This document shows, one piece after another, positions 1,022 through 53,810 of a stretch of DNA of 64,000 nt. The position numbers were made by a program, and so were the translations under genes. The DNA comes from Octopus sinensis (taxonomy: Eukaryota), in assembly GCF_006345805.1 (NCBI RefSeq), contig NC_043014.1:37820001-37884000 (forward strand), written 5' to 3'. Within the stretch, counting starts at the first letter, position 1. Each line of letters starts with the position of its first letter. The notes under the pieces are model-generated. The model was not told the DNA's origin, did no database searches, and saw only the letters and a list, made by a program, of their open reading frames with translations.

Positions 1022-1273
1022 CTGAAATAGTAGAACAAAGACAGAAAAAGGAAAAAGAAATGAAATGTGTGATTGGTATAAGCCATTATACATATCTGTA
1101 ATAGCCAGCAAGGAAAAATCTAAATGATTGCTCAAACAACTGGTCAAGATCTGGTAACCAGAAATCCCTCAAAATCTCACCTTGCCATATAAAAAATAAA
1201 AGAAAAGATAAATATATAATAAAATAAATAGAAAATAAAATTAAAAGTAAATATTTACATACATACAGGCACA

Positions 1274-1672
1274 GGAGTGGCTGTGTGGTAAGTAGCTTGC
1301 TTACCAACCACATGGTTCCAGGTTCAGTCCCACTGCGTGGCACCTTGGGCAAGTGTCTTCTACTATAGCCTCGGGGCGACCAAAGCCTTGTGAGTGGATT
1401 TGGTAGATGGAAACTGAAAGAAGCCCATCGTATATATGTATATATATGTATGTGTGCGTGTATGTTTGTGTGTCCGTGTTTGTCCCCCTAGCATTGCTTG
1501 ATAACCGATGCTGGTGTGTTTATGTCCGCTTCACTTAGTGGTTCAGCAAAAGAGACCGATAGAATAAGTACTGGGCTTACAAAGAATAAGTCCCGGGATC
1601 GAGTTGCTCGACTAAAGGTGGTGCTCCAGCATGGCCACAGTCAAATGACTGAAACAAGTAAAAGAGTAAAGA
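1274..1672 (+). mobile_element. Dominant SINE family A (GGAGTGGCTGTGTGG head, internal TA/TG microsatellite, AAGAGTA tail). Other copies: + 3226-3677, 13208-13645, 20124-20512, 42003-42425, 51475-51920, 52452-52800; - 6352-6750, 11505-11900, 18455-18842, 19470-19876, 27918-28262, 41120-41840, 45562-45940; plus fragments
   Basis: More than 15 mutually alignable copies in the window. Confidence 0.9.
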
Positions 1673-2375
1673 GCATGCATACATACATATATATTGGTGT
1701 TCAGGGTGATTGCAGTCCCTATAAGCATATATGTATACAATTAAGTGCTTTTCCTACAGCATTAGGGCATTTTGGCTCTTATTTCTAGCAATGTAGGTGT
1801 CCTGACACCCCTAGTCAATTTTAATGGCAATTATATTTTCCCCTTATGGTATCACATTGCACATGGTTGTTTACAGTCATTTTTGTATAGGCATTAGCGA
1901 TTCCCTAAATCATCCATAAATTTTTATGGTGAATACATATATGCTGAGAGTGAATTAAGCCTGCTATCAGCTGACTGAGTAGTCTTTGCTGAAGAGGTTA
2001 TGGAAATAGCTGAAACTTAATGTTAAGTATAAAGAATTCTCGGCTGGTATTCTTGGTGATTGTAGTCCCTATGAGCATATATATATATATATATATATAT
2101 ATGTAGGGAGAGTTTACGAAAAAAACAAAAGACGAAGACAGGTGGTGTACAAAACAAACAGATGTATTAGTATAACGCTCAGGAATAGAAAAAGTCGTTT
2201 ATGTTTCGAGTCTACGCTCTTCTACAGAAAGGTACACAGAAAAAACAAGGAGAGAAAAAAATGTGTGTAGTGGCTAACGATCTATCATGGTGACTAGTGC
2301 CGGACAGAAGGGTCAAACACGAGGAGGAAAGTAAGGGAGATAACAAGTTAAAGATGACCCCCAACACATATATAG

Positions 2376-2940
2376 ATATTGTTGGCATCCTTTTTGTCTC
2401 ACAATGGAGTTGCGCATAAAATAATCTAGTCTGGCTTTTACATTTCATATCCTAATACATCTCCTACTGTGGCTATGTAGTCCTATCCTAGACAAACACT
2501 CCCTCTGGCAGGTGTCACAAATGTAGCAAAGACTTTGCCTGGCTGGTTGTAATGTCATAGTTTCTTGTTGACGTCTTTTCTTGTCTTTCCATTTCTCTTC
2601 TCTCTCTCTCTGTGTCACTCCTTTGTGTTCCCTCTTTTACAGTACGTCGCCAATCTCCACGGTTGCTGGCAACTGCTTCCCAGTTGCTAATATTGATGTT
2701 GCAGACCTTCATGTCCCTTTTGCAAACATCCTTGTATTGTAAGAACAGTCTTCCCACAGACCTAGTGCCCCTAGCAAGCTCTCCGTAGAGTATGTCCTTG
2801 GGGATTCTGCCACCTTCCATATGGCTAACATGTCCAAGCCATCTTTGTGTGAGGAGTGCAAACATGCTTGGTATTCCTGCTTGCTTGAGGACATCTTTGT
2901 TGGGGACATGATTCTGCCATCTGATGCCAAGGATTTAGTG
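2376..2940 (-). mobile_element. RTE LINE 3' fragment
   Basis: RWLGHVSHMEGGRIPKDILYGEL...W..AVASNRGDWR and the terminal CDTCQRECLSRIGLHSHSRRC motif. Confidence 0.9.
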
Positions 2941-3399
2941 TTCGATATATATATATATATATATACATAAACATTTATGTGCTTTTCCCAGAGCATTAGA
3001 ACATTTTAGCTCTTATTTTTTGCAATGTAGGTGTCGCATTTAGCGACAATTATATTTTTTCTTTATGGTAACACATTGTTCATGGCTGTTTGCATTAATT
3101 TTTGCATACACACACACACACACACACACACATAATGTACCGTTCTGTGATAGAAGATTCAACAGAAAAAGTACTCCATCTGACGAGAGATAAATATTAT
3201 TTATTTAAAGTACACAATACGCGTAGAAGTGGCTGTGTAGTAAGTAGCTCGCTTATGAACCGCATGGTTCCGGGTTCAGTCCCACTGCATGGCACCTCGG
3301 GCAAGTGTTTTCTATTATAGCCTTGGGCCGACCAAAGCCTTGTGAGTGGATTTGGTAGGCGGAAACTGAAAAATAAAAAGCCTGTTGTATATATGTACG

Positions 3400-7597: not shown

Positions 7598-7710
7598 CAT
7601 TAGTGAAACACGGGTCTCATCAAGACTATTTTCTGAAGTTGTTTTCTTGACAGTCTCTGCATTGTTATCTATTACTGGAACATTTAGCTGCTGAGATGTG
7701 CTTATTTCAT
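7598..7710 (-). CDS. SLC16: SLC16/MCT-family transporter exon (central cytoplasmic loop); missed by the ORF track
   Basis: 113 nt after a strong pyrimidine tract, tttctcttttag|AT...CTAATG|gtaaat. Open frame NEISTSQQLNVPVIDNNAETVKKTTSENSLDETRVSLM. Phase 1 to 0 exactly bridges the flanking exons. Confidence 0.82.
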
Positions 7711-8826
7711 CTAAAAGAGAAAGAGAAAAAAGAAAGAAAATATAAGAAAAAGACGAAACTTTAAAGGGAAAAGAAATAAAAAGAGAAGTAGATTGCTGTT
7801 GATTAATCTGTGTAACACAGTTTTTGTCCTTGGGTAGCGACTGTTATTTCCTATTTGTTTACCCCTAGAACGTATGCAAAATGGTTAATATTTCCTTCAA
7901 AATTTGCTTTTGTTACATTTATTAAAACCCCAAAGAATCCCTCTCTACACATGTCTATGATGCTCCTCCACTATTTCTGCTCACAATCAGAGATGTACAT
8001 ATTGTATTGTCAGCCATTAAGGGACATACTCAAGTAGTTAACGCCAAGCTACTGACAAACAAATCTGTGATATTGACCAGAATATTTGCTATAATGATAT
8101 TTTTGCTTCAGCAACTCAGCACTGAATTTGTCTGAAATGTAATGGAAAATAGGTCAGTTTCAAAACATTGATGTCCTTGTGACAAAAGCAAAGTCTGAAG
8201 GGAATAGCAGTCATTTCCTTTGGTTTCTGGATAGAACAAATTTGGAAATAACACTGACCAAAGATAAAAAACAATAAAATTTTTGTTACAGTGTTATTTC
8301 TGAGAATAGATGAGTGATATAATCCTTTCTACTATAGGTACAAGGCTAGAATTTTTTAGGGAAGGGGTTGTTAGTTGTTTAGATCAATCCCAGTACTCAA
8401 CAGGTACGCATGTTATCAATCCTGAAAGAATGAACGGTAAAGTCAACCTTAGTAGCATTTGAACTCACGACATTAAGCTGTAAGAAATACTGCAAAGCAT
8501 TTTGTCCAATGCGGTAACAATTCTACCAGCTTGCCAAGTGTATATAGAAAGTCTTATCAGTGGGTGATCTGCAGAATGGGTCTAAACAGATGCAGAATGG
8601 AGAGCAGCATTATAATAAAACCAATATAGTGATGGGGATGATAGGGAGGGCTGCTCAATGATGATGGTGATCACGTCACTTGATTGCAAGACTGACCAGG
8701 CTATCAGATGTTGTTACACGTCGTTAGGTTACAATGCACTTTTGTATTGTTTTAAATAATAGCAAGCATTCTGCATGGTGGTTGGCTAGAGATGAAGTGT
8801 CAAAATACAATCCAAAAACGAATATT

Positions 8827-9319
8827 CACCAGAAAAAGTTAATGGTGTCTGTTTGGTAGTCCGGCTTCATGAGACCTGGTAAGTCAATTACAGCAGATGT
8901 ATACATCAACCAACTGGACGAAATGATGAGTGAACTTGTAATTAAACAAATGTGATTGGCCAATAGAGACATGCCAGTTCTCTTGCAAGACAATGCTTGA
9001 CAAAATGTTGCACAAAGAATGCTACTCAAGTTACAGGAACAGAACTTGGAAGTTCTGTCATCCACCTTGCACCAACTGACTATCATGTTTCTAGGCATTA
9101 GACAACTTTTTTGCAAGGAAAGAACTTTAAACCTGAAGAAGATGCAAAAACAAGATTTCATCACCTCTTGCTCTTCAGAATTCTTCACTGCTGGTATAAA
9201 TAAGCTACCGATAAAATAGCAAAATGGTGTTGATAATTTAGGTGCATACTTTGATTACTACATTACTTTTTGTTGGGATAAAGTAAAATAAACTTTCAGT
9301 TCGAAATCAGATATTCCTT

Positions 9320-9413: not shown

Positions 9414-9776
9414 TAGAGAAGAACCACCATGTAGCAATTCAACAATGATACAATTACATCAAAATATATAGAAAAAACTTAAATATACAATATAACATAT
9501 ACCTATAATTAAGTAAAGTACTAAATAATAAATAGATAGTATATAATTATATACTATCTATTTATACTATAAATAGTATAGATAAATAGAATAACAACCA
9601 CGATGTGTAACAACATCAGACTGCCTGGTTGGTTATGCAATCAATTATATACTATTTATTTATTATTTTGTACTTACTTAATTATAGGTATATGTTTTAT
9701 CGTATACCTAATCTTTTTCTATATATTTTGATTTAATTATATCATTGTTGAATTGCTACATGGTGGTTCTTCTCTA
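9414..9776. repeat. Foldback with about 135-bp inverted arms between (TA)n tracts
   Basis: 9414-9549 is the reverse complement of about 9643-9776. Confidence 0.85.
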
Positions 9777-9869
9777 GTTTATATATATATATGTATTGTA
9801 TATTGTGAAATTTGATTTAGTATTACTAAATTGAATTTTTCCCTGTAAGTTTGGAATCATATTCCCTAA

Positions 9870-9908
<39 letters not shown>

Positions 9909-10294
9909 AAAATCAAAATCAAAATCGAAATCGATCAACATCAAAGGAAATTGTAGCTGTGATACTAGTGCTGGTGGCACGTAAGAGAACCATCCGAACG
10001 TCGCCGTTGCCAGCGCTGCCCCGACTGGCCTCCATGCCAGTGGCACGTAAAAAGCACCATCTGATCGTGGCCATTTGCCAGCCTCGTCTGGCACGTAAAA
10101 AGTACCCACAACACTCATGGAGTGGTTGGCGTTAGGAAGGGCATCCAGCCGTAGAAACATTGCCAGATCAGACTGAGCCTGGTGCAGCCTTCTGGCTTCC
10201 CAGACCCCAGTTGAACCATCCAACCCATGCTAGCATGGAAAACGGACGTTAAACGATGATGATGATGATGATGATGATATACACACACACACAA

Positions 10295-10832: not shown

Positions 10833-10863
<31 letters not shown>

Positions 10864-11002
10864 ACTTATAAATAAGAGCAAACGAAAAAATTTTTAATGC
10901 CAAATATGCCGAAACTAGACACATTGTCCATAACCATATAATTTATCACAATAAGCACGTTACTCGAAAAAGGTCGACAGAAATTTCTAAAAAATTCCGT
11001 TA

Positions 11003-11062
11003 TTATCATATCGGACCGATTTCAGAGTTAGTTCATAAGAACCTTCCCTTCGTCAGTGATAA
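11003..11062 (-). ncRNA. Type I hammerhead ribozyme motif with complete core, in a Penelope-like repeat
   Basis: uuauca-CUGACGA-agggaagguuc(uuau)gaacuaacucu-GAAA-ucgguccga-UA-ugauaa. Stem I is 6/6 bp, stem II 9/11 bp, stem III is palindromic, and the cleavage triplet is AUA. Confidence 0.8.
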
Positions 11063-11111
11063 ATGTGGCAAAGAAATAAATGAAATACTTACTCATACCC
11101 ATATATATATA

Positions 11112-11495
11112 TGAGCAAAACGCCCTCCACCCCGTCCAATGGATGGTACTGAGTTGTCAAACATTTAAACCAAATTTTCTCAAAACAACTTGTCCGACCA
11201 TCCCATTTTGTCACATTATTTCAAGCCACCTGGCTATTTTTGTGCAAACTGCATGTGCCTTTTCCTGTAGTATTGATCACAACAGCTGATGTACTTGCAT
11301 GTATAAATGCACGTTCCCACGGCTTTATCGATCGCATTCTCATCTGGAATCGATTTTTGTAATTTTTTCAAGACTTATACATGCCCTGATACCGTCAGTG
11401 TCTGCATATCAAGTTTGAGCGCGATTGGATGGAGGATGCCTGAGATCCTAGAAGACACACACACAGACAGACAGAACGGATTTTATATAATAGAT
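11112..11495 (-). mobile_element. Helitron-like non-autonomous element (related copies at 39795-40253 and 47064-47402)
   Basis: Minus-strand 5' end A|TCTATTATATAAAA; subterminal hairpin consensus ccgtcc-aat-ggacgg near the other end; no TSD or TIR seen. Confidence 0.5.
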
Positions 11496-12714
11496 ATACT
11501 CTTTACTCTTTTACTTGTTTCAGTCATTTGACTGCGGCCATGCTGGAGCACTGCCTTTAATCGAGCAACTCGACCCCGGGACTTATTCTTTGTAAGCCCA
11601 GTACTTATTCTATCGGTCTCTTTTGCCGAACCACTAAGTGACAGGGACATAAACACACCAGCATCGGTTGTCAAGCAATGCTAGGGGGACAAACACAGAC
11701 ACACAAACATACACGCACACCTATATATATATACATATATACGATGGGCTTCTTTCAGTTTCCATCTACCAAATCCACTCACAAGGCTTTGGTCGGCCCG
11801 AGGCTATAGTAGAAGACATTTACCCAAGGTACCACACAGTTGAACTGAACCCGGAACCATGTGGTTGGTAAACAAGCTACTTACCACACAGCCACTCCTG
11901 CGCCTATATATACATATTTAGAAGGTTGTTTGTTATGGCTAGTCAGAGAGTAACCATTGGTTACCATTATAGAAGCAACTCCTCAGACTCAAAAGTTAAC
12001 AGATTTTTGAGTCTGATAAGCTACCCATGCAGCTAAGTGCTTTATAGAAATGAAACCAATGGTCACTCACTGTCCATTTTCCATTCTGACATGGGTTTGA
12101 TGGTTTGACAGGAAGGCGGCAAGCTGGCAGAAACGTTAGCACGCCGGGCGAAATGCTTAGGGTTGTTTCGTCTACTGATACACTCTGAGTTCAAATTCCG
12201 CCAAGGTTGCCCTTGTCTTTCATCCTTTCGGGGTCGATAAATTAAGTACCAGTTACGCACTGGGGTCGATGTAATTGACTTAATCTGTTTGTAATGGCAG
12301 ACGAAATACCTATTTCTTTACTACCCACAAGGGGCTAAACACAGAGAGGACAAACAAGGACAGATAAACGGATTAAGTCGATTATATTGACCCCAGTGTG
12401 TAACTGGTACTTATTTAATCAACCCCAAGAGGATGAAAGGCAAAGTCGACCTCGGCAGAATTTGAACTCAGAACGTAGTGACAGATGAAATACCTATTTC
12501 TTTACTACCTACAAGGGGCTAAACACAGAGGGGACAGACAAGGACAGACATAGGTATTAAGTCGATTACATCGACCCCAGTGCGTAACTGGTACTTATTT
12601 AATCGACCCCGAAAGGATGAAAGGCAAAGTCGACCTCGGCGGAATTTGAACTCAGAACGTAGCGGCAGACGAAATACCGCTAAGCATTTCACCCGTCTCT
12701 GCCAGCTCACCGCC

Positions 12715-13135: not shown

Positions 13136-13372
13136 GTTGTTGCATTGGGTGTGCTGTCACACCCAATGCCACCAAATTTCAAGCAGGTGTATAACAAATG
13201 TGGTGCAGGAGTGGCTGTGTGGTAAGTAGCTTGCTTACCAACCACATGGTTCCAGGTTCATTCCCACTGCATGGCACCTTGGGTGAGTGTCTTCTACTAT
13301 AGCCTCGGGCTGACCAAAGCCTTGTGAGTAGATTTGGTAGACGGAAATTGAAAGAAGCCTGTCGTATATATG

Positions 13373-13449
<77 letters not shown>

Positions 13450-14017
13450 GTATGTGTGTGTATGTTTGTGTGTGCTCCCAACATCGCTTGACAACTGTTT
13501 ACATCCCCGTAACTTAGCAGTTCGGCAAAAAAGACCGATAAAATAAGTACTAGGCTTACAAAGAATAAGTCCTGAGGTCGATTTGCTCGACTAAAGGTGG
13601 TGCTCCAGCATGACTACAGTCAAATGACTGAAACAAGTAAAAGAGAGTATTAAGATTTGTTATTAAATCAAGTTTGCCATTATTGATGGGTGTACAGTGC
13701 ACACCTAACACACCCAGAATATACGCCCCTGATGTTTACTTTGTCTGAATATTTACCAATATATTAATGATTACATAAGCTTTTTTTCTGTGTATGTATT
13801 ACAAAGTCTACCAAAGTATGTGTCAATATTTATTTATGTCATTGTATGCTTGTGTGTACAATTTTAACTGTGACTGGTTACGTATTTTCATAACTTGTAA
13901 AAAAATTCCTTCCAGTGTACTTCTGTACTATGGTCTCGGAGTTTATATCTGTGTAAATGGGTGAGTGTGTGTTTGTGTGCATGTATGAGTATTTGTGTGT
14001 GAGTCTCTCTCTCACTC

Positions 14018-17066: not shown

Positions 17067-18280
17067 TCATTCCATTCGCAACACATGACCATACAAGTGC
17101 AGTCGTCTCTCTTGCACACCACATCTGATACTTTTTAAGTCCAACTTTTCTCTCAGGGTGCTTACACTCAGTGTATGCACACTGACATTATACATCCAGC
17201 AGAGCATACTGGCCTCATTCCTTGCAATCTTATGCATGTCCTCAGCAGTCATGGCCCATGTTTCACTGCCATGTAGCATGGCTGTTCGTACACATGCATC
17301 ATACAGTCTACCTTTTACTCTGAGCGAGAGGCCCTTTGTCACCAGCAGAGGTAAGAGCTCACTGAACCTTGCCCAGCCTATTCTTATTCTAGCAGCTACA
17401 CTTTCAGAGCATCCATCCTCGATACTGACCTGGTCACCTAGGTAACGGAAGCTATCAACTACTTGTAGTTTTCCCCCCTGGAATGTGACGGAAGCTGTTC
17501 TCTGCATATTTTCAGTGTTTATTGCACCTGAGCATTTGACACACACAAAAACTATCATTCCAGTTAGCCTTCCTTTGATATTGCTGCACCCCTTATGTGT
17601 CCATTGCTTACACTGGGTACATCTTATGGAGTTTCTACCTATGCCTTTTCTACCTAATTAGTTGGGCTATGAGCCTCTCCATGACTTTCATTACCTGATC
17701 CAACAACTTGATACCTCTGTAATTATTTGTATCTAATGTGTCACCTTTACCTTTGTAGCAGTTGACTATGGCACTGCTACACCAGTCATTGGGTATGACT
17801 CCTTCATGTATCACCTGGTTGACTATATGGGTGACTAGACTATAGCCGACACTGCCAGATCTTTTAAACCTCTCTGCAGTGATTCCTGATGGGCTGGGGG
17901 CTTTTTCTGTGTTCATACCCCTAATTACTATATTACCAAGGTACTGTCAATTCGGATAGCTGGTCCTTCTGTTGGGTCGACATTTGGCAGACTCTCTTTC
18001 TCCCATTCATTCTCTTTATTTAGCAACCTTTGGCGTCTTCAAGTCTCTCTCCTTGCAGCCATCATCCATGTGGACACCTTTATCTCCTATGACATCACGA
18101 TTCTCTTGCAACGCATACACTATCTTGCAACACAAAGCACCTCATGTCTTTGGTCCTCATGACAGAGAACATTGGCAAAGTTTTTCTTATCTGCTTCCCC
18201 TCTGGCTAAATAAACCTGTCTCCTAGCTTCCCTTCTGGCAGTCTGATAGAACTCCCTGCTACCACTGTTCTTCCAGTCCA
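17067..18280 (-). mobile_element. RTE-clade LINE ORF fragment with internal deletion of the RT core
   Basis: KAPSPSGITAE..IPNDW..YKGKGD..NYRGIKLL joins at about 17650 to a Cys-rich insert, then VVDSFRYLG..LHGSETW..LHLYGHVLRM. Confidence 0.9.
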
Positions 18281-19702: not shown

Positions 19703-21653
19703 TATATATATATATACAACGGGCTTATTTCAGTTTCCGTCTACTAAATCTACTCACAAGGATTTTGGTCGGCCCAAGTCTATAGTAGAAGACACTTGCC
19801 CAAGGTGCCACACAGCGGGGCTGAACCTGGAACCATGTGGTTGGGAAGCAAGCTACTTTCCACACAGCCACTCCTGCACCTATTCATTTATTTTGAATCT
19901 TTGTCTGAGTAGTTACAGATGGGAAATCCCATACATGTTCTCTACATGTCTATACTGATTATGAGGCAAGCTGGCCTCATAATGTTAGCGTGCTGGACAA
20001 AACGCTTCGTTGCATTTCGTCTGTTTTCACATTTTAAGTTCAGGTTCCACTGAGGTCAACTTTGCCTTTCTTCCTATGAGGTCAATAAAATAAGATTGTT
20101 ATAACTGCTACATCACAGGCGTAGGAGTGGCTGTGTGGTAAGTAGCTTGCTAACCAACCACATGGTTCCGGGTTCAGTCCCACTGCGTGGCACCTTGGGC
20201 AAGTGTCTTCTGCTATAGCCCCGGGCCGACCAACGCCTTGTGAGTGGATTTGGTAGACGGAAACTGAAAGAAGCCTGTTGTATATATGTATATATATGTA
20301 TGTGTATGTATATGTTTGTGTGTCTGTGTTTATCCCCACAACATCGCTTGACAACCGATGCTGGTGTGTTTATGTCCCCGTCACTTAGCGGTTTGGCAAA
20401 AAGAGACCGATAGAATAAGTACTGGGCTTACAAAGAATAAGTCCCGGGGTCGATCTGCTCGACTAAAGGCGGTGCTCCAGCATGGCCGCAGTCAAATGAC
20501 TGAAACAAGTAAAAAAAAAAAAAAAAAAATTCATTTCATTTTGAAAATTAACTATCTTGTGTGTTTAGTTTAATGGTCTATCAATGTAAACAGTGAGTTT
20601 CTTTGCCACAGGGGTCTGGAAGACACTCAGCAAGAAATGGAAATAAAACTGAAAGAAGAATATAATAATAATGACATAATAATAACTAGCTGACCCGGTG
20701 CCATCAAAAGTGACAGCTAATCGTTGTATTTTATATATGATTTAGGTGTAAAATACGGCACATAATAATCACAGATACAAACATTCACATACTTCCCTTG
20801 TACATGAACACGCATACACACATATACTCACACGGAGTTGAAATGCTGTTTGATTTTTTTTTTCCAGCATTGAACGTTCATCATTCCATTTCCATTGCAT
20901 GCACGTACACACACACACACACACATACACACACACGCACAAACACACACACACACAAACATTCACATACTTCCCTTTTACATACCCATACATATACTCA
21001 CACAGAGTTGAAATGCTGATATTTTTCAACCTCTTCCTTTGATATTCATCTATCGTCCCTTCTTTTTTCATGTTATGATGGAGAAAAACAGAAGATACAC
21101 GACACTCTTTTTGCCACTTCCTTTCTCTCGTTGCAGTTACTTTCTCTCACTCTCTTTCAGTCAGGGCTATTACTCTCACTACTTCTCCTTCACTGAATTA
21201 CTATTTTCTCTCCTCTCCCTTCACTTATACCCTTTCTCCTACCTCGGTCTTCTCCTACTCTGTGATTTTGGACAAATATATATACTTTGCAGGTAGCATG
21301 TAAAAATACCTTTTGAGCATGGTCGTTGCCAGAACTGCCTTATTGGCCCTCATGCCGGTGGCACGTAAAAAGCAGCCACTACACTCTCGGAGTGGTTGGC
21401 GTTAGGAAGGGCATCCAGCTGTAGAAACTTTGCCAGACCAGATTGAGCTTGGTGCAGCCTCTAACTCACCAGTCCTCAGTCAAACCGTCCAACCCATGCC
21501 AGCATGGAAAGCGGACATTAAACGATGATGATGGTGATGATGATGATGATATAAAAACATTACGCGCATTATTATATTAGGAGATAATGATGATGGTGAT
21601 GATGATAATGATGAAATTGATGATGATGATAAAGAAAGAGTCAATGAACTTAC

Positions 21654-21929
21654 TCAAAGGTATATCCTTGTCAGTATTCTCGACAAGCTTGTATTTTAAG
21701 GGTCGGCACAGAGCTCCAGCAACTGCCATGTTGAGTACCAAACTTGAGAGCATGAGTAAAGTGCCTCTCAGTCCATAATAAGCCAAGAGATTTTCAGTGA
21801 TGTAGTTGACGACAAACACACCAGCTCCATTGCCCGTGGTAGCAAGGCTTACTGCCAAAGCTTGTCTTGAGCTGAAGTACAGTCCGACAACAACGTTTGC
21901 AGTGAAGAAACATAATCCAGTGAAAAGTC
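21654..21929 (-). CDS. SLC16: SLC16/MCT-family transporter exon (TM4-TM6)
   Basis: 276 nt, tttctctttag|GA...TTTGA|gtaagt, phase 1 to 1. Encodes GLFTGLCFFTANVVVGLYFSSRQALAVSLATTGNGAG...YYGLRGTLLMLSSLVLNMAVAGALCRPL, matching the MCT patterns YFxxRRxLA, YGWRG and GALxRP. Confidence 0.93.
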
Positions 21930-22520
21930 CTAAAGAGAAAGTAAGCGGGGAAGAAAAGAAAAAGAAGAACACATATAAATAAATCTACATATACATAGAT
22001 ACATACATAAATACATACATACAGTTTTTTTACCTTGTCTTATATATATATATAATATATATATATATATACTCTTTACTCTTTACTCTTTTACTTGTTT
22101 CAGTCATTTGACTGTGGCCATGCTGGAGCACCGCCTTTAGTCGAGCAAATCAACCCCAGGACTTATTCTTTGGAAGCCTAGTACTTATTACTATCCGTCT
22201 CTATTGCTGAACCGCTAAGTTACGGGGGACTTAAACACACCACCATCGGTTGTCAAGCAATGTTGGGGACACACAGCCATAAATATATAAATACATGTAT
22301 ATAATAAGTTTAGGTGAAAACAGAGTAAAAATAGACATTAAAATATATCTAACAAAATATTTAAATAATCAAGACAGGCAGGAGGCATTATTATATAGAA
22401 TAAAATGAAATACAGATTTTCATACTGTTTTAGAAAAAAAAAAATCATAGAATTACTGAAAGTTTCAGGGACCACAAAGTTTGCTGCAGAATAAGTACCC
22501 CGCCACTGAATATTAATAGC

Positions 22521-22659: not shown

Positions 22660-25224
22660 GACCCCAAAAAGTTCTACCAAGAACTGGGCAAAAATAAAAT
22701 AGAAGTCACTGCAGCACCAACAGCAGAAGAATTGGAAGAATTCTAGAAAGAAATATGGTCGGCGAACGAACAGCCCAAAAAAGGAGTATGAAAATAACAA
22801 ACTCGGCATCTGAACAACTTTGGACCCCCATAACAACTGAAGAGGTCACCCAGGCACTGCAAAAACTAAGCAACTGGAAGGAACCTGGGCATGACAAGAT
22901 CCCCAACTTCTGGTTGAAATATCTAACAGGAATGCACAAAAAGCTGGCTGAAAACTTTAACAGCATACTAGCAGAGCCAGAGACAATGCCTGAATGGCTC
23001 ACGAAGGGGAAAACCATCTTAATTCCCAAATCAAATGAAACAACAAAACCAAAAACTACAGACCAATAACCTGCCTCCCTACTATGTTCAAGGCATTTAC
23101 TGCAGTGATATCGCAAAGGCTGAACAAGCACCTGGACGAAAACAAACTGTTCCCAGAAGAGCAGAAAGGATGCCGCAAGGCTCATATGGCTGTAAAGATC
23201 AACTAATGATTAATAAAGCCGTAACTGAAGACAGCCACAGAAAGAAGAAAGGCCTCAGTATGGCCTGGATTGACTACAAAAAGGCGTTTGATAGCATCCC
23301 CCACACATGGATCCTCGAAACACTAGCCATTAACAAAGTAGCACCAACAATCATAAATTCATAGAGCACTCTATGAATAAATGGCAAACAGTCCTACACC
23401 TCCAAACAAAAGATGGACTCATGAAAACCAAAGACATCCCCATTAGAAGAGGAATATTCCAGGGAGACACACGCTCTCTCCACTCCTTTTCTGCTTGGCA
23501 CTGTCACCTCTATCTGATATGCTAAATAGAACTGGATGCGGATATAAATGTTACGGCAAAACGATCAGCCACCTTTTATATATGGATGACCTAAAACTAT
23601 ACGCTGCAAATGACAAACAGCTGGAACACTATTAAAGACATTTCATGGATTTACCAAAGAAATAGATATGAAATTTGGATTAGAAAAATGCGCCAAAGTA
23701 ACCATGAAAGGGAAAACTAGTTAAAGAGTACCACTCACACTAGATAAAACCAATGAAATAAAAGAATTAGACCAAAGCCAACTTACAAATACTTAGGAAT
23801 CCATGAACTAGATAAGACACAACACACACAAATGAAAGAGAAAATAAAAAAGAATATTATAGATGAGTTAGATCAATACTAAAACAGAGCTCAATGCTAA
23901 AAACAAGATAATAGGTATCAACACTTTAGCTGTCCCAGTTATAAGTTACAGCTACAATATCCTTAACTGGACACGAAATGAACTGTCCAAAATAGATAGG
24001 AAAAAAACAAGAAAAATACTGACAGGATCTAGGATGCATCACCCAAAATCTGACATAGAAAGACTATATATACAACGTATAGAAGGTGGTAAAGCCTTAT
24101 ACAGCTGGAAAACTACTATAAATAACCACCATAGGACTGCAAAAATACCTACTTCAGAAGGAAGGAAAACTGATCCAGATAGCAGCAAAACACGAGCAAA
24201 ACAAAAACTGTTCTCAGTATTTAAGGAAGCTGACAAATACAAACAAGAAATCATACCACCTAATAAACACAAAGAAGAAGAAGAAGATGATGAAGAACAA
24301 CAAAAGCTATAAAACAAATGAAATCCAAACTAAAAATAGAACAGCAACGAACCATGATAAAACGATGGCAAGTAAAGCCCCTTCATGGTAAATACTGCAC
24401 TAAACTAAACGCAAAAGAAATAGACAAAGAAAAATCCCAGCAATGGTTGAGAAGCTCAGGACTCAAAGCAGAAACAGAGGGATTTTTTATTGCAGTACAA
24501 GACCAAAGCCTCCCCACCAGAAATTACCAAAAACATGTAATGAAAGAAATATTACAAGTAACTGCAGAATATGTGGAGATGGACAAGAAACAATAAATCA
24601 TATTATCTCTAGCTGCCCAGTCCTGGCTAAGAAGGAATATATTCACAGACATGACAAGTTTGGAACCTACATACATTGGAAGCTATGCCAACATTATGGA
24701 ATAACAACAGAAAAAAGATGGTATAGGCACACACCAGAAAAGGTCACAGAAAACGAGAAGAGCAACCATACTCTGGGATATGCCGATACACACAGATAGA
24801 GAAATTAAGGCCAACAGACCAGATATAGTTGTCAGAGATCATGAAGAAAAAAAATGCTTTCTAATTGATGTATCAATACCGGCAGATGACAACGTGTCTC
24901 TAAAAGAAATGGAGAAACTCTCAAAATACAAGACCTGGAAATAGAGGTAACTAGAATGTGGAACCTGAAAACAGAAACAATTCCTATCATAGTAGGTGCA
25001 TTAGGCATGATAAAAAAATATTCAGACAAATACATAACAAAAACACCAGGACTTACAAACACATATAACATACAGAAAGCACTAGTAGGCACTGCACACA
25101 TCCTACGCAGAACACTTTCCATACAATAACCATCAGAGCATCACAACAAATCACAGCACATACCCAAGGCACACAGAGCTGCGCTCGGTAGTGAAGTGAA
25201 AGCACGCTATAAAAATAAAACTAC
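22660..25224 (+). mobile_element. R4/Dong-clade non-LTR retrotransposon (RT plus restriction-like endonuclease), 5'-truncated and frameshifted
   Basis: Frame fragments MAWIDYKKAFDS, RGIFQGD, YMDDLKLYA, the CCHC knuckle CRICG..HIISSC, RHD and the RLE motif RPDIVV..LIDVSIP. (AAT)n arrays on both sides. Confidence 0.92.
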
Positions 25225-30894: not shown

Positions 30895-31510
30895 AGGTCT
30901 CACCAAGGAAATGACTAGAGATCGAGACCTATGGAAGTATGCTGTGCGTGAGAAGACCCGGCAAGACCAGTGAGAACAGTCAAAATCAAACCAAATCAAC
31001 ATCAGTGGAAATTGCAGCTGTGGTTAAGCGAACCATCCGATCGTTTGTCCGTTGCCAGCCTCGCCTGGCCCCCGTGCCGTTGGCACGTAAAAGCACCATC
31101 CGCTCGTGTCCGTTGCCAGCCTAGCCTGGCCCCCATGCCGGTAGCACGTAAAAGCACCATCCGTTCGTGTCCGTTGCCAGCCTCGCCTGGCCCCCGTGCC
31201 GTTGGCACATAAAAGCACCATCCGCTCGAGTCCGTAGCCTCGCCTGGCCCCCGTGCCGGTGGCACGTAAAAACACCATCCGTTCGTGGCCGTTTGCCAGC
31301 TCTGTCTGGCATCTGTGCAGGTGGCACGTAAAAAGCACCCACTACACTCACGGAGTGGTTGGCGTTAGGAAGGGCACCCAGCCGTAGAAACACTGCCAAA
31401 TCTGACTGGGCCTGATGAAGCCTTCCGGCTTCACAGACCCCAGTTAAACCGTCCAACCCATGCTAGCATAGAAAATGGACGCTAAATGATGATGATGATG
31501 ATGATGATGA
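30895..31510 (+). mobile_element. RTE LINE ORF end plus 3' UTR with internal roughly 57-bp minisatellite and (GAT)n tail. Related 3' ends at 9905-10275, 16395-16835, 21290-21550 (+) and 34820-36003, 37255-38570, 43765-43990 (-)
   Basis: Begins with the ORF end LTKEMTRDRDLWKYAVREKTRQDQ*, then repeats, then ggaagggca(c/t)ccagccgtagaaac...(gat)n. Confidence 0.82.
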
Positions 31511-34500: not shown

Positions 34501-34994
34501 ATGTATACATATATACTTACTTGTATCTATTTATATATTTATATATACATATATATGCGTGTGTGCGTGTGTGTGTATGAATATATGGATAGAGCTTACT
34601 TGGAAATGGTTGTGTGGCATTCAGTCATATAATAATATAAATAATATATATATACATACATATATGAACATACTTACATATATATGTATATACATATGCA
34701 TATGTGGGCACAGGATGTCACATGCATATGTATATACATATATGTGTAAGTATGTACACATATGTATGTATATATGCATATATATATTATTTATATGAAT
34801 ATATACATATTCATATATATCATCATCATCATCATCATCATTTAACGTTCGCTTTCCATGCTAGCATGGGTTGGACGGTTCAACTGGTGTCTGGGGAGCC
34901 CGAAGGCTGCACCAGGCCAGTCAGATCTGGCAGTGTTTCTACAGCTGGATGCCCTTCCTAACACCAACCACTCCGAGAGTGTAGTGGGTGATTT

Positions 34995-36003
34995 TATGTG
35001 CCACCGACACAGGTGCCAGACGAGGCTGGCGAACGGCCACGCTCGGATGGTGTTTTTATGTGCCACCAACACAGGTGCCAGACAAGGCTGGCAGACGACC
35101 ACGCTCGGATGGTGCTTTTTATGTGCCACCGACACAGGTGCCAGACGAGGCTGGCGAACGGCCACGCTCGGATGGTGTTTTTATGTGCCACCGACACAGG
35201 TGCCAGACGACCACGCTTGGATGGTGTTTTTATGTGCCACCGACACAGGTGCCAGACGAGGCTGGCGAACGGCCACGCTCGGATGGTGTTTTTATGTGCC
35301 ACCGACACAGGTGCCAGACAAGGCTAGCAGACGACCACGCTCGGATGGTGTTTTTTTTATGTGCCACCGACACAGGTGCCAGACGAGGCTGACGGACGGC
35401 CACGCTCGGATGGTGTTTTTATGTGCCACCGACACAGGTGCCAGACAAGGCTAGCAGACGGCCACGCTCGGATGGTGTTTTTTTTATGTGCCACCGACAC
35501 AGGTGCCAGACGAGGCTGACGGACGGCCACGCTCGGATGGTGTTTTTATGTGCCACCGACACAGGTGCCAGACAAGGCTAGCAGACGGCCACGCTCGGAT
35601 GTGTTTTTATGTGCCACCGACACAGGTGCCAGACAAGGCTAGCAGACGACCACGCTCGGATGGTGTTTTTTTTATGTGCCACCGACACAGGTGCCAGACG
35701 AGGCTGACGGACGGCCACGCTCGGATGGTGTTTTTATGTGCTACCGACACAGGTGCCAGACAAGGCTAGCAGACGACCACGCTCGGATGGTGTTTTTATG
35801 TGCCACCGACACAGGTGCCAGACAAGGCTAGCAGACGACCACGCTCGGATGGTGTTTTTTTTATGTGCCACCGACACAGGTGCCAGACGAGGCTGACGGA
35901 CGGCCACGCTCGGATGGTGTTTTTATGTGCTACCGACACAGGTGCCAGACAAGGCTAGCAGACGACCACGCTCGGATGGTGTTTTTTTTATGTGCCACCG
36001 ACA
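34995..36003. repeat. About 62-bp minisatellite, about 16.5 units, expanded inside an RTE 3' UTR
   Basis: Unit gtgccaccgacacaggtgccagacNaggctNNNNgacgNccacgctcggatggtgttttttat, counted 16 times plus a partial unit. Confidence 0.95.
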
Positions 36004-36177
36004 CAATATTTATATATGCATATGTGTGTGCGTGTGTGTGTGTGTGTGTGCTTGTGCATGCATAATTGCACCTGTTGGGTTTTCTTTAATAATATACCAC
36101 ACCAGAAGAGGTCAATTTATACAGTTTACCTTCTTTAGTAAATCAAATTGTGTGACATTTCCATACATAAGTGGTTT

Positions 36178-37254: not shown

Positions 37255-38780
37255 CATCATCATCATCATCATCATCATTTAACGTCCGCTTTCCATGCTA
37301 GCATGGGTTGGACGGTTCAACTGGGGTCTGGGGAGCCCGAAAGCTGCACCAGTCCAGTCAGATCTGGCAGTGTTTCTACAGCTGGATGCCCTTCCTAACG
37401 CCAACCACTCCGAGAGTGTAGTGGGTGATTTTATGTGCCACCGACACAGGTGCCAGACAAGGCTGGCAAACGGCCACGCTCGGATGGTGTTTTTATGTGC
37501 CACCGACACAGGTGCCAGACGAGGCTGGCAGACGGCCACGCTCGGATGGTGTTTTTATGTGCCACCGACACAGGTGCCAGATGAGGCTGGCAAAACGGCC
37601 ACGATCGGATGGTGCTTGTTACGTGCCCACAGCACGGAGGCCAGTCGATGCGGTACTGGCTACGGCCACGTTCGGATGGTTTTCTTGTGTGCCACGTGCC
37701 ACCTGGCACTGGTACCACAAGGATACAAATTCCATTGATGTTCATCTATTTTGATTTGTTTTGATTTGATTTGATTTTCACTTGCCTCAACAGGTCTTCA
37801 CAAGTGTCACAAGAAGGTAGGTATGCACAGGTGGACTGACTACGTCCCAGGTAGGGGCCATGGGTTATGGCCTGACTAGTCTTGCCGGGTCTTCGGATGG
37901 TGTTTTTATGTGCCACCGACACAGGTGCTAGATGAGGCTGGCGAACGGCCATGATCGGATGGGGTTTGTCATGTGCCCACCGCACTGACTACAGCACTGA
38001 TGGATTTCTTGTGTGCCACAGGCACTGGTACCACAAGATACAAATTCCATTGATGTTCATCTATTTGTCTATTTTGATTTGATTTGATTTGATTTGATTT
38101 TCACTTGCCTCAACCGGTCTTCACAGGTGTCACAAGAGGAAGGTATGCACAGGTGGACTGACTAGTCTTGCCGGGTCTTCGGAAGGTGTTTTTATGTGCC
38201 ACCGACACAGGTGCCAGATGAGGCTGGCGAACGGCCATGATCGGATGGTGTTTGTTACGTGCCCACAGCACGGAGGCCGGTCGATGCGGAACTGACTACG
38301 GCCACGTTCGGATGGTTCTCTTGTGTGCCACCGGCACTGGTACCACAAAGTGTGTGCCACCGGCACTGGTACCACAAAGATACAGATTCCATTGATGTTC
38401 ATCTATTTTGATTTGTTTTGATTTTGATTTTGATTTTGATTTTCACTTGCCTCAACAGGTCTTCACAAGTGTCACAAGAAGGAAGGTATGCACAGGTGGA
38501 CTGACTACGTCCCAGGTAGGGGCCATGGGTTATGGCCTGACTAGTCTTGCCGGGTCTTCGGCAAGACTATATGTATATATATATATGTATATATATATGT
38601 ATATATATGTATATATATATTTGATATAATTTATAGAAGACATGAAATAGAAGAAGCAATATAAACATAGATATGCAGAACAAAAAGGCACCCAGAAATT
38701 CAGAAATGTATAAGATAATAGTTCTTTATATATATTATATATATATATAAGTATCAGATAATAATAAAATTGAAATTTAC

Positions 38781-39131: not shown

Positions 39132-39177
39132 AACACAACATTTCGGCTGATATACCCTCCAGCCTTCATCAGGTGTC
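39132..39177 (-). ncRNA. Minimal type I hammerhead ribozyme motif, near complete
   Basis: gacac-CUGAUGA-a-ggcug(gaggguauau)cagcc-GAAA-U-GUU-guguu. Has an extra A after A9, U at 15.2 and no stem III loop. Confidence 0.65.
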
Positions 39178-39706: not shown

Positions 39707-41332
39707 GTGTGTGTGTGTGTATAAATATATAAATATATATACATATAGATAAATGGATAGATAAATAGATAAATATATAGATATATATGTAAATACGAGC
39801 AAAACGCCCCCTGTCCAATGGACGGTGCTGAGTTGTCAAGGATTTAAACCAAGTTTTCTCAAAACAACTTGTCCGACCGTCCCATAGGCCTGCCCTTTGA
39901 GAAACACTGATTTAACCTAAATTTGAGACACTAGCAAAGGAAGAAATAAAGATAGACTTTTTTCTATTCTAAAGAAAAATGATTTTATTCACACAAATAT
40001 GCAACTGAAGAATTCAAAGTACCAGTAAGTACATCGCAACAGCTGATGTACTTGCACATACAAATGCACGTTCCCACGGCTTTATCGATTGCATTCTCAC
40101 CTGGAATCGATTTTTGTAATTTTTTTCAAGACTTATACACGCCCTAATACCGTCAGTATCTTCATATCAAATTTGAGCGCAATCGGATGGAGGATGCCCG
40201 AGACCCTAGAAGACACACACACAGACAAACAGAATGGATTTTATATAATAGATATGTATGTATGCATGCATGTGTTCATGTATGTATGTATGTATGTATG
40301 TATGTATGTATGTATGTATGTATGTATGTATGTATGTGTATGTAAGTGCATTTGTGTGTTGTCTCCTCACAATTGCTCGAAAACTGATGTTGGTTTGTTG
40401 CCTTCAAGGTGGTTTAGCTGGATAACATAGCTGCAATTCTATGACTGAAAGAAACAAAGCTCTAAAAGATAACTCACTACACCTGTTATAATGGTGAAGA
40501 ACAGGTAAAAAATACAAAAAGGAAATGGAAAATATCAGAAGCTGTTATAAGTCTAAAACCTTGATCCAAGAAAGGCAATGAACTCACCAAAGAGTACTGT
40601 TAGGTTTTGATATATATCCAAAAACAGAAAACCTGTTGAAATATTTGTGGAAGAAGCTAGTAAGAAATGACTCGTTGCTTATGACAGCCTAAGATACATA
40701 CCTCCAAATGTGTAATATCTATTTTGAAAAATTCTAGAAGGTGCCAAAAAAAATGGTACTAGTTATGGCTGTGCATGGGACGAGTCAAGTGACCTTGAGT
40801 ACTTTGACTATTTCTACTAAAAAAAGAAAGGAAATAAAAGAAAAAAAGGAAAAGATATGTTTAAAATGATTTCAATGCTTCTAGAAATATTTCTTGTAGG
40901 AAACGGACAGAAATAACATGTTGATGAGTTTGTATAGGTTGGATATTATTGGTGATATCAGAGAGAGAAAAAAATGGCATTCTCTTTTTGGGTTTGCTTC
41001 ACTGTCTAACAAGAATTGGTACAAATATTTTTGTTCTGGTACTTCTATATACATATGCATACACCTACCTACAAATACACAAATACATACATACATACAT
41101 ACTTACGTACACATGTACATACTCTTTACTCTCTCTTTTACTCTTTTACTTGTTTCAGTCATTTGATTGTGGCCATGCTGGAGCACCGCCTTTAGTCGAG
41201 CAAATCGACCCCGGGACTTATTCTTTGTAAGCCCAGTACTTATTCTATCAGTCTCTTTTGCCGAACCACTAAGTGACGGCGATGTAAACACACCAGCATC
41301 GATTGTCAAGCAATGCTAGGGGGACAAACACA

Positions 41333-51628: not shown

Positions 51629-51662
<34 letters not shown>

Positions 51663-53767: not shown

Positions 53768-53810
53768 CCACTACAATCGTTTCTTGTCTTGATCGACAAT
53801 CTTCAGGTGG
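53768..53810 (-). ncRNA. Minimal type I hammerhead ribozyme motif with complete core, in a Penelope-like foldback
   Basis: ccac-CUGAAGA-uuguc(gaucaa)gacaa-GAAAC-gauu-GUA-gugg. All core nucleotides are present; stems of 4, 5 and 2 bp. Confidence 0.78.

What the first reader, a model, noticed from the sequence alone, without database searches (positions are those of the whole stretch)
11003..11062. Complete hammerhead ribozyme on the sense strand of the SLC16 intron
Seen: CUGACGA and GAAA core, perfect 6-bp stem I, 11-bp stem II with two A-A mismatches, a palindromic stem III (AUCGG-U-CCGAU) and an AUA cleavage site predicted at 11009/11008. Established: Penelope-like elements carry minimal type I hammerheads, and palindromic stem III forms work best as dimers. 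Inference: the SLC16 pre-mRNA contains a potentially self-cleaving motif in the 14-kb intron between the TM4-6 exon and the loop exon.
Basis: partly seen in the sequence, partly recalled or inferred. Interest (0 to 1): 0.7.

Follow-up and report, generated by a model that had tools for sequence, protein, structure and literature searches.

The report
Relic hammerhead ribozyme in octopus intron
A complete hammerhead self-cleaving RNA motif does sit on the sense strand of an intron of an Octopus sinensis monocarboxylate-transporter gene, but it looks like a solitary leftover of a mobile element drifting neutrally (its Octopus vulgaris copy has a dead catalytic core), so it is an ordinary find.

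Summary
The motif is real and placed exactly as described: minus strand 11062→11003, with stem I (6 bp), CUGACGA, an 11-position stem II, GAAA, the palindromic stem III AUCGG-U-CCGAU, and A17 at 11009. The window is Octopus sinensis chromosome CM016876.1. The host gene is XP_029647576.1 (MCT9-like, minus strand), and the motif lies in its 13.9-kb intron 3 in sense orientation.

It is not a chance product: 0 strict hits in 2296 shuffles. The window also holds a second full hammerhead-like motif (1983-2035, +) and a PLE-type minimal hammerhead (39132-39177, −).

No Rfam hammerhead model hits it, even at E≤10 on 74 nt. As a monomer the hammerhead fold (−10.3 kcal/mol) loses to a fold that sequesters the CUGA box (−14.7). 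Two copies cofold into the classical double hammerhead, but only one copy is present.

The motif forms the 3' tip of a ~100-nt orphan fragment lodged in a (TA)n insertion hotspot. No PLE ORF, pLTR or tandem partner is nearby. The O. vulgaris orthologue carries G5→A in the invariant core, and the motif has diverged 3/60 against a 4.4% background.

Verdict: a retroelement-derived hammerhead relic, evolving neutrally. It is a new member of a known kind and of low interest.

The parts
11003..11062 (-). Type-I hammerhead motif. Stem I 5' strand 11062-11057; CUGACGA 11056-11050; stem II hairpin 11049-11024; G12A13A14 11023-11021; stem III palindrome 11020-11010; A17 at 11009 (predicted cleavage 11009/11008); stem I 3' strand 11008-11003.
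   Evidence: Sequence read; strict scanner hit with stems 6/4/4; 0 of 2296 shuffles give such a hit; dimer cofold is the double hammerhead.
10999..11100 (-). Orphan fragment of about 100 nt (GGGTATGAGTAAG...CCACAT + hammerhead + TAAC) with the hammerhead at its very 3' tip. Presumed 5'-truncated 3' end of a hammerhead-bearing retroelement.
   Evidence: No other copy in about 275 kb of octopus sequence. Homology to the neighbouring foldback family begins only at 10998. The fragment is not homologous to the foldback arm.
11101..11112 (.). Short (TA)n run bounding the fragment on its 5' side (in minus-strand sense).
   Evidence: Sequence read.
10864..10998 (-). One arm of an unrelated foldback (palindromic) repeat abutting the hammerhead fragment.
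   Evidence: Copies at 86-87% identity form a complete inverted pair at L027 82281-82550 and L028 103562-103831, without any hammerhead.
10835..10863 (.). (TA)n microsatellite closing the composite insertion. Orthologous alignment to O. bimaculoides resumes right after it.
11113..11912 (-). Two further repeats nested in the same (TA)n site: a ~380-nt repeat (11113-11495) and a tRNA-derived SINE (11496-11912). They mark the site as an insertion hotspot.
   Evidence: The 380-nt repeat has copies at 39797-40253 and 47070-47405 that end at 'ggcgttttg' with no hammerhead after them. The SINE forms inverted repeat I1 with 1260-1676.
21649..21930 (-). Exon 3 (TM4-6) of the MCT9-like gene XP_029647576.1; upstream boundary of the host intron.
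   Evidence: tblastn of P0005 on L027.
7598..7714 (-). Exon 4 (loop exon) of the same gene; downstream boundary of the host intron.
   Evidence: tblastn of P0005 on L027.

Best explanation
The motif is the hammerhead ribozyme of a retroelement of the Penelope-like / non-LTR-retrozyme kind. It survives as a heavily 5'-truncated, solitary 3'-end fragment inserted in a (TA)n microsatellite inside intron 3 of the Octopus sinensis MCT9-like gene.

In its parent element the ribozyme would have cut tandem or multimeric transcripts. Its palindromic helix III (AUCGG-U-CCGAU) pairs with the same segment of a neighbouring copy to form a double hammerhead. That step is inferred from the fold and from the literature.

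In the present context it is transcribed only passively, as part of the host pre-mRNA, and as a single copy. It mostly adopts an inactive alternative fold, so it probably cleaves very little or not at all.

It has no host function. It drifts at the neutral rate and has already lost an invariant catalytic base in the sister species O. vulgaris.

Shown: the motif, its strand and intron, its non-random nature, its junction and microsatellite context, the fold energies, and the orthologue sequences. Inferred: the retroelement parent, the dimer mechanism, and the lack of activity.
For: 1. The core and all three helices are complete, with 0 strict hits in 2296 shuffles.
2. Two more hammerhead-like motifs lie in different sequence contexts in the same window: 1983-2035(+) and the PLE-type min-HHR at 39132-39177(-), which gave 0 hits in 300 shuffles. 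This fits the reported massive, highly variable occurrence of such motifs in metazoan genomes (PMC4209133).
3. The hammerhead sits at the 3' tip of an orphan ~100-nt fragment bounded by (TA)n. PLEs carry their hammerheads near their 3' ends and prefer microsatellite, notably (TA)n, targets (PMC8557442).
4. A SINE, a 380-nt repeat, a foldback arm and, in O. bimaculoides, a different foldback element all occupy the same (TA)n site.
5. The two-copy cofold MFE (-34.7 kcal/mol) is exactly the double hammerhead. The monomer hammerhead fold is -10.3 against an MFE of -14.7 that pairs CUGA with UCGG.
6. The O. vulgaris orthologue has CTAACGA (G5->A) plus two pair-preserving stem changes. That is 3/60 against a background of 127/2893 = 4.4%, with P(>=3) = 0.49.
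7. The min-HHR at 39132-39177 shows the same decay. Its core is intact only in O. sinensis, with G12->A in O. vulgaris and U4->C in O. bimaculoides.
Against: - No second copy of the ~100-nt fragment was found in the ~275 kb of octopus DNA I could read, so the parent family is not identified.
- No PLE RT/GIY-YIG ORF or pLTR is in the window; the RT remnants are LINE-type.
- The motif departs from the published PLE min-HHR hallmarks: no bulge after A9, A10.1-U11.1 instead of G-C, and a long helix III.
- No Rfam hammerhead model hits it.
- The direction of the G5/A5 difference is not fixed by an outgroup, because the O. bimaculoides site falls in an assembly gap.
- Nearest-neighbour energies ignore hammerhead tertiary and core interactions, so monomer activity cannot be excluded.
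Confidence: 0.75

Rival explanations
1. The motif is an active intronic ribozyme. In O. sinensis it self-cleaves within the MCT9-like pre-mRNA, either as a monomer using the 4-bp helix III with a GUC triloop or by pairing between two nascent transcripts, and so influences processing or yield of the host mRNA.
For: All invariant core positions are intact and the motif is on the sense strand of a transcribed intron. A 4-bp helix III hairpin is sterically possible, and invertebrate retrozyme hammerheads with 2-bp helix III plus a tetraloop cleave as monomers (PMC7229834). The two stem substitutions in O. vulgaris keep pairing.
Against: - The hammerhead fold makes up only about 0.2% of the 60-nt ensemble, and less with flanks.
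- Stem I is six weak pairs with no recognisable loop 1 / loop 2 tertiary contact.
- 10.1-11.1 is A-U.
- There is no covariance-model support.
- The sister species has G5->A in the core, and divergence equals the neutral background.
- The motif is absent from the much shorter Argonauta intron.
- PLE-type hammerheads cleave poorly in vitro even as dimers (PMC4209133).
Confidence: 0.1
2. The motif is a chance look-alike. AT-rich intronic sequence happens to satisfy the hammerhead descriptor and never was a ribozyme.
For: The fragment is single-copy in all the sequence I could read. No Rfam hit. It has non-canonical A10.1-U11.1 and two A.A mismatches in helix II. Across a genome of several Gb, a few strict chance hits cannot be excluded; the upper bound is below 1 per 2296 windows.
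Against: There were 0 strict hits in 2296 shuffles of this window, against 2 strict hits plus 1 min-HHR observed. The helix III palindrome and the exact double-hammerhead cofold were not required by the scanner, yet both are present. The position at a fragment tip inside a (TA)n hotspot is typical of such elements. The neighbouring min-HHR is demonstrably ancestral in three species.
Confidence: 0.05
3. The motif belongs to the adjacent foldback (MITE-like) element: it is a diverged left arm, or a family-specific module, of the palindromic repeat whose right arm follows it.
For: The hammerhead ends only 4 nt before homology to the foldback family begins, and in the complete copy a left arm occupies the equivalent place.
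Against: Local alignment of the fragment against the foldback left arm scores 13, against a shuffle mean of 16.2, and 483 of 500 shuffles do as well. Against the reverse complement of its own body it scores 18, against a mean of 15.6. The complete foldback copies in O. sinensis and O. vulgaris carry no CUGANGA...GAAA motif.
Confidence: 0.05

Closest known systems
Hammerhead ribozymes of Penelope-like elements (min-HHRs in pLTRs; Cervera & de la Pena 2014, PMC4209133)
   Same: Type-I topology, a 6-bp helix I, a long helix II, a palindromic helix III that allows a dimeric double hammerhead, a location at the 3' tip of a repeat fragment, a microsatellite (TA)n target, and high sequence variability between copies.
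   Different: Helix III is 4-5 bp on each side rather than 0-2 bp. There is no unpaired nucleotide between A9 and 10.1. The 10.1-11.1 pair is A-U, not G-C. There is no pLTR, no RT/GIY-YIG ORF and no tandem partner in the window. A textbook min-HHR of this kind is present elsewhere in the window, at 39132-39177(-).
Metazoan non-LTR retrozymes (tandem 170-400-bp repeats with type-I hammerheads expressed as circRNAs; PMC7229834; bioRxiv 10.64898/2026.07.22.740005)
   Same: A type-I hammerhead in a short, AT-rich, non-coding unit. Monomeric dispersed copies are common and are often intronic: about 43% of Xenopus copies overlap introns. Dimer-dependent cleavage is known for weak helix III variants.
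   Different: There is no tandem repeat and not even a full monomer; only about 100 nt survive. No loop 1 / loop 2 tertiary-contact nucleotides are recognisable.
Double-hammerhead ribozymes of newt satellite 2 transcripts (Forster et al. 1988, as cited in PMC4209133 and PMC6765202)
   Same: The single motif is thermodynamically disfavoured, while two copies form an extended intermolecular helix III and two active sites. The predicted cofold of this RNA is exactly that.
   Different: The newt motifs occur in tandem multimers that supply the partner in cis. Here the copy is solitary.
Conserved intronic hammerheads of amniotes (HH9/HH10; de la Pena & Garcia-Robles 2010, cited in PMC6765202)
   Same: Sense-strand location in an intron of a protein-coding gene.
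   Different: The amniote motifs are ultraconserved and match Rfam models. This one has a dead core in the sister species, diverges at the neutral rate, and matches no model.

Membership tests
Hammerhead ribozyme (motif level) | Invariant core C3 U4 G5 A6 N7 G8 A9 / G12 A13 A14 / A15.1-U16.1 / H17 (not G) | tested here: met
   CUGACGA ... GAA A...U A, read directly and found by the exact-core scanner.
Hammerhead ribozyme (motif level) | Three helices I, II and III radiating from the core | tested here: met
   Helix I has 6 bp. Helix II has 4+5 bp around an A.A/A.A internal loop. Helix III has 4 bp plus a triloop as a monomer, or 5+5 bp as a dimer.
Hammerhead ribozyme (motif level) | Conserved G10.1-C11.1 pair closing helix II | tested here: not met
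   The pair is A10.1-U11.1, so purine-pyrimidine is kept and G-C follows at 10.2-11.2. PMC4209133 lists G10.1-C11.1 as highly conserved.
Hammerhead ribozyme (motif level) | Match to curated covariance models (Rfam RF00163, RF00008, RF02275-7) | tested here: not met
   No hit at gathering score. No hit at E<=10 in 261 nt or in 74 nt.
Hammerhead ribozyme (motif level) | Loop 1 / loop 2 tertiary contacts needed for activity at physiological Mg2+ | tested here: inconclusive
   Helix I is open after 6 bp with no convincing continuation or internal loop. Loop 2 is UUAU. No recognisable contact, but sequence alone cannot exclude one.
Hammerhead ribozyme (motif level) | Site-specific self-cleavage after H17 | not testable with these tools
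   Needs in vitro transcription or mapping of RNA ends.
Hammerhead ribozyme (motif level) | Evolutionary support: conserved core with covarying stems | tested here: not met
   The O. vulgaris orthologue has G5->A in the core. The two stem changes are one-sided (G.U->A-U and U-A->U.G). Divergence is 3/60 against a 4.4% background.
PLE hammerhead (min-HHR in pLTR) | Located in direct repeats (pLTRs) flanking an RT + GIY-YIG ORF, usually in tandem | tested here: not met
   There is no repeat of the fragment, and no PLE ORF. The RT remnants in the window hit RVT_1 and zf-RVT, which are LINE-type.
PLE hammerhead (min-HHR in pLTR) | Helix III absent or 1-2 bp, with palindromic 15.2-16.2 / loop 3 | tested here: inconclusive
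   Helix III is palindromic (AUCGG-U-CCGAU) and the dimer fold is predicted, but it is much longer than the published min-HHR helix III.
PLE hammerhead (min-HHR in pLTR) | Extra unpaired nucleotide between A9 and 10.1 | tested here: not met
   The A after CUGACGA has a U partner before GAAA, so it reads as the pair 10.1-11.1.
PLE hammerhead (min-HHR in pLTR) | Insertion bias for microsatellites, notably (TA)n | tested here: met
   The fragment is bounded by (TA)n at 11101-11112, and the composite insertion ends in (TA)n at 10835-10863. The O. bimaculoides site is a (TA)n tract (PMC8557442).
Metazoan non-LTR retrozyme | Tandem repeats of 170-400 bp, each unit with a type-I hammerhead | tested here: not met
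   A single hammerhead and no tandem unit within the window or L027.
Conserved intronic hammerhead (HH9/HH10-like) | Sense-strand intronic position with strong cross-species conservation | tested here: not met
   The position is met, but conservation is not. The core is mutated in O. vulgaris, and the motif is absent from the Argonauta locus.

The most novel reading that the evidence does not exclude
The O. sinensis copy is still catalytically competent and cuts intron 3 of the MCT9-like pre-mRNA, while the O. vulgaris allele (G5->A) is a natural dead-core control. The two sister species would then form a ready-made pair for asking whether a sense-strand intronic ribozyme changes host-gene splicing or expression in an animal.
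Probability: 0.06. Interest if true: 0.5.

Novelty: new member of a known kind. Interest (0 to 1): 0.2.

Why it matters
Hammerhead motifs left by Penelope-like and retrozyme-type retroelements are already known to be abundant in metazoan genomes, including introns. One more decaying copy adds little.

The useful points are practical:
- Such variants escape every Rfam hammerhead model, so scans based on covariance models under-count them.
- Comparison with the sister species shows quickly that neither this copy nor the neighbouring minimal hammerhead is under constraint.
- I found no published description of hammerhead-bearing elements in cephalopods in the searchable library, so the octopus examples are a modest taxonomic extension.

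Tried and rejected
- Rfam cmscan of the whole window at gathering score, then at E<=10 on 261 nt and on 74 nt around the motif. No hammerhead hit. The motif at 1983-2035 gets only a sub-threshold RF00008 hit, 18.4 bits against a gathering score of 48.5. The min-HHR gets nothing.
- Public-collection scans for CTGANGA-N20-32-GAAATCGGNCCGATA gave 24 metagenome hits and 2 viral hits. None has stems I or II, and the number is about what chance predicts in microbial DNA.
- Self-BLAST of the motif unit against the window and against four cephalopod loci found no second copy of the hammerhead fragment.
- Exact-protein look-ups of window ORFs (17067-17558 and 8826-9188) and of P0001 found nothing on record. 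The route that worked was cluster member P0005, then the loci of P0005 to P0009.
- The idea that the 380-nt repeat upstream (11113-11495) carries the hammerhead was rejected. Its two other copies end before any such motif.
- The idea that the hammerhead is a diverged arm of the adjacent foldback repeat was rejected by alignment against shuffles.
- The search for a PLE ORF in the window found only LINE-type RT remnants.
- A scan for decayed hammerheads with one core mismatch added only the O. vulgaris orthologue.
- The O. bimaculoides orthologous site could not polarise the G5/A5 change, because it falls in a run of N.
- Lunse et al. 2016/17 (PMC5785218) is not held in the library.

Full report
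**Observation.**
The minus strand from 11062 to 11003 reads UUAUCA-CUGACGA-AGGGAAGGUUC-UUAU-GAACUAACUCU-GAA-A-UCGG-U-CCGA-U-A-UGAUAA. This is a complete type-I hammerhead descriptor.
- Helix I has 6 perfect pairs.
- All invariant core bases are present: C3 U4 G5 A6, G8 A9, G12 A13 A14, and A15.1-U16.1.
- H17 is A, at window 11009, so the predicted scissile bond lies between 11009 and 11008.
- Helix II has 11 positions: 7 Watson-Crick pairs, 2 G.U pairs and 2 A.A mismatches.
- Helix III is the 5+1+5 palindrome AUCGG-U-CCGAU.

**Chance.**
I wrote a scanner that demands the exact core and contiguous stems. It returns this locus (stems 6/4/4), a second locus at 1983-2035 on the plus strand (6/6/5), and a weak one at 53768-53810 on the minus strand (4/5/2). 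In 2296 dinucleotide-preserving shuffles of the whole window, both strands, there were 0 hits at stems >=6/4/4, 0 at >=5/4/3, and 42 at the loosest setting, or 0.018 per window. A separate scanner for PLE-type minimal hammerheads found one locus at 39132-39177 on the minus strand, with 0 hits in 300 shuffles. The motif is therefore far more than chance gives at the scale of a window.

**Gene context.**
The concatenated MFS-like exons led to a protein cluster that contains XP_029647576.1, 'monocarboxylate transporter 9-like isoform X1' of Octopus sinensis. Its locus, L027 on CM016876.1, is identical to the reverse complement of the window over 62,300 nt. Exons map to the minus strand:
- exon 1 at 52300-52046,
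- exon 2 at 38925-38773,
- exon 3 at 21930-21649,
- the loop exon at 7714-7598.

The remaining exons lie further downstream: exon 5 near 850-1010 by sequence identity to the 542-1168 ORF, the rest beyond the window start.

**Covariance models.**
Rfam 15 gives no hit in the window at gathering scores. No hammerhead family appears at E<=10 in 261 nt or in 74 nt. The motif at 1983-2035 gets only 18.4 bits with RF00008, against a gathering score of 48.5. The minimal hammerhead gets nothing. My inference is that the long interrupted helix II and long helix III are penalised by models built from canonical hammerheads.

**Folding.**
- For the 60-nt RNA, the hammerhead secondary structure evaluates to -10.3 kcal/mol.
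- The MFE is -14.7 kcal/mol and pairs the CUGA box with UCGG of helix III, so the hammerhead fold is about 0.2% of the ensemble.
- With 30-200 nt of flanks that share falls to 1e-4 or less.
- Two copies cofold with an MFE of -34.7 kcal/mol. That structure is exactly the double hammerhead: an extended intermolecular helix III, with helix I formed between the two molecules.

This matches the behaviour described for metazoan type-I hammerheads with weak palindromic helix III and for PLE min-HHRs, which cleave, and only poorly, as dimers or in tandem (PMC4209133; PMC7229834; PMC6765202). Here there is only one copy. No second copy or degenerate partner exists in the window or in L027.

**Local anatomy.**
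Read on the minus strand, the order of features is as follows.
1. A tRNA-derived SINE (11912-11496).
2. A ~380-nt repeat (11495-11113). Its other copies, at 39797-40253 and 47070-47405, end at 'ggcgttttg' with no hammerhead after them.
3. A short (TA)n run (11112-11101).
4. A ~100-nt orphan fragment (11100-10999) whose last 60 nt are the hammerhead.
5. From 10998, one arm of a foldback repeat. Complete palindromic copies of this repeat lie at L027 82281-82550 and L028 103562-103831 and contain no hammerhead.
6. A (TA)n run (10863-10835).

The hammerhead fragment is not a diverged foldback arm. Its alignment score is 13 against a shuffle mean of 16.

In O. bimaculoides the orthologous site is a (TA)n tract that holds an assembly gap and a different foldback insert. 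Alignment to O. sinensis resumes immediately after the 3' (TA)n. The site is therefore a microsatellite insertion hotspot, and the hammerhead is the 3' tip of a short truncated insert. PLEs carry their hammerheads near their 3' ends and show a microsatellite, notably (TA)n, insertion bias (PMC8557442). No PLE coding sequence is nearby; the RT remnants in the window hit RVT_1 and zf-RVT, which are LINE-type.

**Comparative evidence.**
- The O. vulgaris orthologue (L028 72908-72967) differs at 3 of 60 positions.
- One change turns CUGACGA into CUAACGA, which is G5 to A in the invariant catalytic core.
- The second is G16 to A in helix II, turning G.U into A-U.
- The third is A57 to G in helix I, turning U-A into U.G.
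- The surrounding 2.9 kb differ at 127 of 2893 aligned positions, or 4.4%. The probability of at least 3 changes in 60 nt at that rate is 0.49.
- So there is no excess conservation, and one species has a core that established hammerhead biochemistry says is inactive (my own knowledge: G5 is essential).
- The Argonauta hians locus has a much shorter gene and no hammerhead-like hit.

The minimal hammerhead at 39132-39177 gives an independent and better polarised example. It is present in all three Octopus species, but the core is intact only in O. sinensis. O. vulgaris has G12 to A, and O. bimaculoides has U4 to C. By parsimony, an ancestral intact ribozyme has decayed independently in two lineages.

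**Interpretation.**
The best-supported reading is a retroelement-derived hammerhead relic. The ribozyme once processed tandem transcripts of a PLE-like or retrozyme-like element through a double-hammerhead dimer. It now sits as a solitary truncated fragment, co-transcribed passively in the host intron, probably inactive or barely active, and evolving neutrally.

What is shown:
- the motif, its strand and its intron;
- that it is not a chance product;
- the junctions and the microsatellite context;
- the fold energies;
- the orthologue sequences.

What is inferred:
- the parent family, since no second copy could be found in the sequence available;
- the dimer mechanism;
- the lack of activity.

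Rivals:
- An active intronic ribozyme, about 0.1. The core is intact and a 4-bp helix III hairpin is possible. Against it are the unfavourable fold, the absence of tertiary-contact features, A10.1-U11.1, and the lack of conservation.
- A chance look-alike, about 0.05.
- A module of the adjacent foldback repeat, about 0.05, which the alignment test argues against.

**Comparison with known families.**
It works like the dimer-dependent type-I hammerheads of newt satellite transcripts, PLE pLTRs and some retrozymes. As for membership, it meets the motif-level definition of a hammerhead (core plus three helices). It fails G10.1-C11.1, any covariance-model match, and evolutionary support. It fails the architectural definitions of a PLE hammerhead (pLTR/ORF context, very short helix III, bulge after A9) and of a retrozyme (tandem units). 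It shares the palindromic helix III and the (TA)n target. It is not comparable to the ultraconserved intronic hammerheads of amniotes.

Intronic copies of hammerhead-bearing retroelements are commonplace. About 43% of Xenopus retrozyme copies overlap introns, although they are depleted there relative to intergenic DNA.

**Novelty and score.**
This is a new member of a known kind. I found no paper describing hammerhead-bearing elements in cephalopods, so the taxon is a small extension, but the biology is ordinary. Interest is 0.2. The most novel reading not excluded is that the O. sinensis copy is active and the O. vulgaris G5A allele is a natural dead control for testing intronic ribozyme effects. 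I give that a probability of about 0.06 and an interest of 0.5 if true.

Noticed in passing
window 1983-2035 (+): A second complete hammerhead-like motif: UCUUUG-CUGAAGA-GGUUAU-GGAA-AUAGCU-GAA-ACUUA-AUGU-UAAGU-A-UAAAGA, with stems 6/6/5 and a G.U pair at 10.1-11.1. It is antisense to the MCT9-like gene, in intron 4. It gets a sub-threshold Rfam RF00008 hit (18.4 bits, E = 0.099). It is identical in O. vulgaris (L028 81878-81930), and no orthologous alignment was found in O. bimaculoides.
   Followed up: partly
window 1695-2087 (+): The 1983-2035 motif lies 9 nt before a 43-nt segment that is repeated at both ends of a ~350-nt unit (1695-1737 and 2045-2087, 86% identical) and is followed by (TA)n. 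This resembles the 30-40-bp 'tail' and partial-tandem anatomy described for PLE insertions. A 74%-identical partial copy of the unit body lies at 2961-3108. It is followed by CTGACGA at 3181 and cut by a SINE at about 3222.
   Followed up: partly
window 39132-39177 (-): A textbook PLE-type minimal hammerhead: gacac-CUGAUGA-a-GGCUGG...UCAGCC-GAA-AUGU-U-guguu. It has the bulge after A9, G10.1-C11.1 and a 6-bp helix II. It is on the sense strand, 207 nt upstream of exon 2. It is present in O. sinensis, O. vulgaris and O. bimaculoides, but the core is intact only in O. sinensis (G12->A in O. vulgaris, U4->C in O. bimaculoides).
   Followed up: yes
window 53768-53810 (-): A weak hammerhead-like hit (stems 4/5/2) upstream of exon 1, inside a local inverted repeat (53667-53722 / 53842-53898). 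At this stringency chance gives 0.018 hits per window, so it may be fortuitous.
   Followed up: no
window 10864-10998 (-); L027 82281-82550; L028 103562-103831: A foldback (MITE-like) repeat family with ~135-nt arms around a 9-nt centre, ending in (TA)n. Only one arm is present next to the hammerhead fragment.
   Followed up: partly
window 1260-1676, 11496-11912, 13199-13485, 20115-20401, 51462-51748 and others: Many copies of a tRNA-derived octopus SINE (GGCGCAGGAGTGGCTGTGTGGTAAGTAGC...) in both orientations, several of them ending in (TA)n / (CA)n tracts. They account for most of the long direct and inverted repeats in the window.
   Followed up: no
window 34850-36130 and 37290-38400: Arrays of a 62-65-nt tandem repeat giving long ORF-like reading frames (…CATDTGARRGW…), with related dispersed copies at 9774-10223 and 31024-31456. 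The nature of this repeat was not examined.
   Followed up: no
window 17067-17946 (-), 22755-24799 (+), 2518-2934 (-): Fragmented LINE-type reverse-transcriptase remnants, with weak Pfam hits to RVT_1, zf-RVT and PHD. No GIY-YIG or PLE-type RT was detected.
   Followed up: partly
L028, L029, L030 versus L027: The size of the orthologous MCT9-like gene varies widely. The annotated gene spans are about 93 kb in O. vulgaris, 72 kb in O. sinensis, 21 kb in O. bimaculoides (a truncated model with N gaps) and 11 kb in Argonauta hians. The difference reflects the repeat load of the introns.
   Followed up: no
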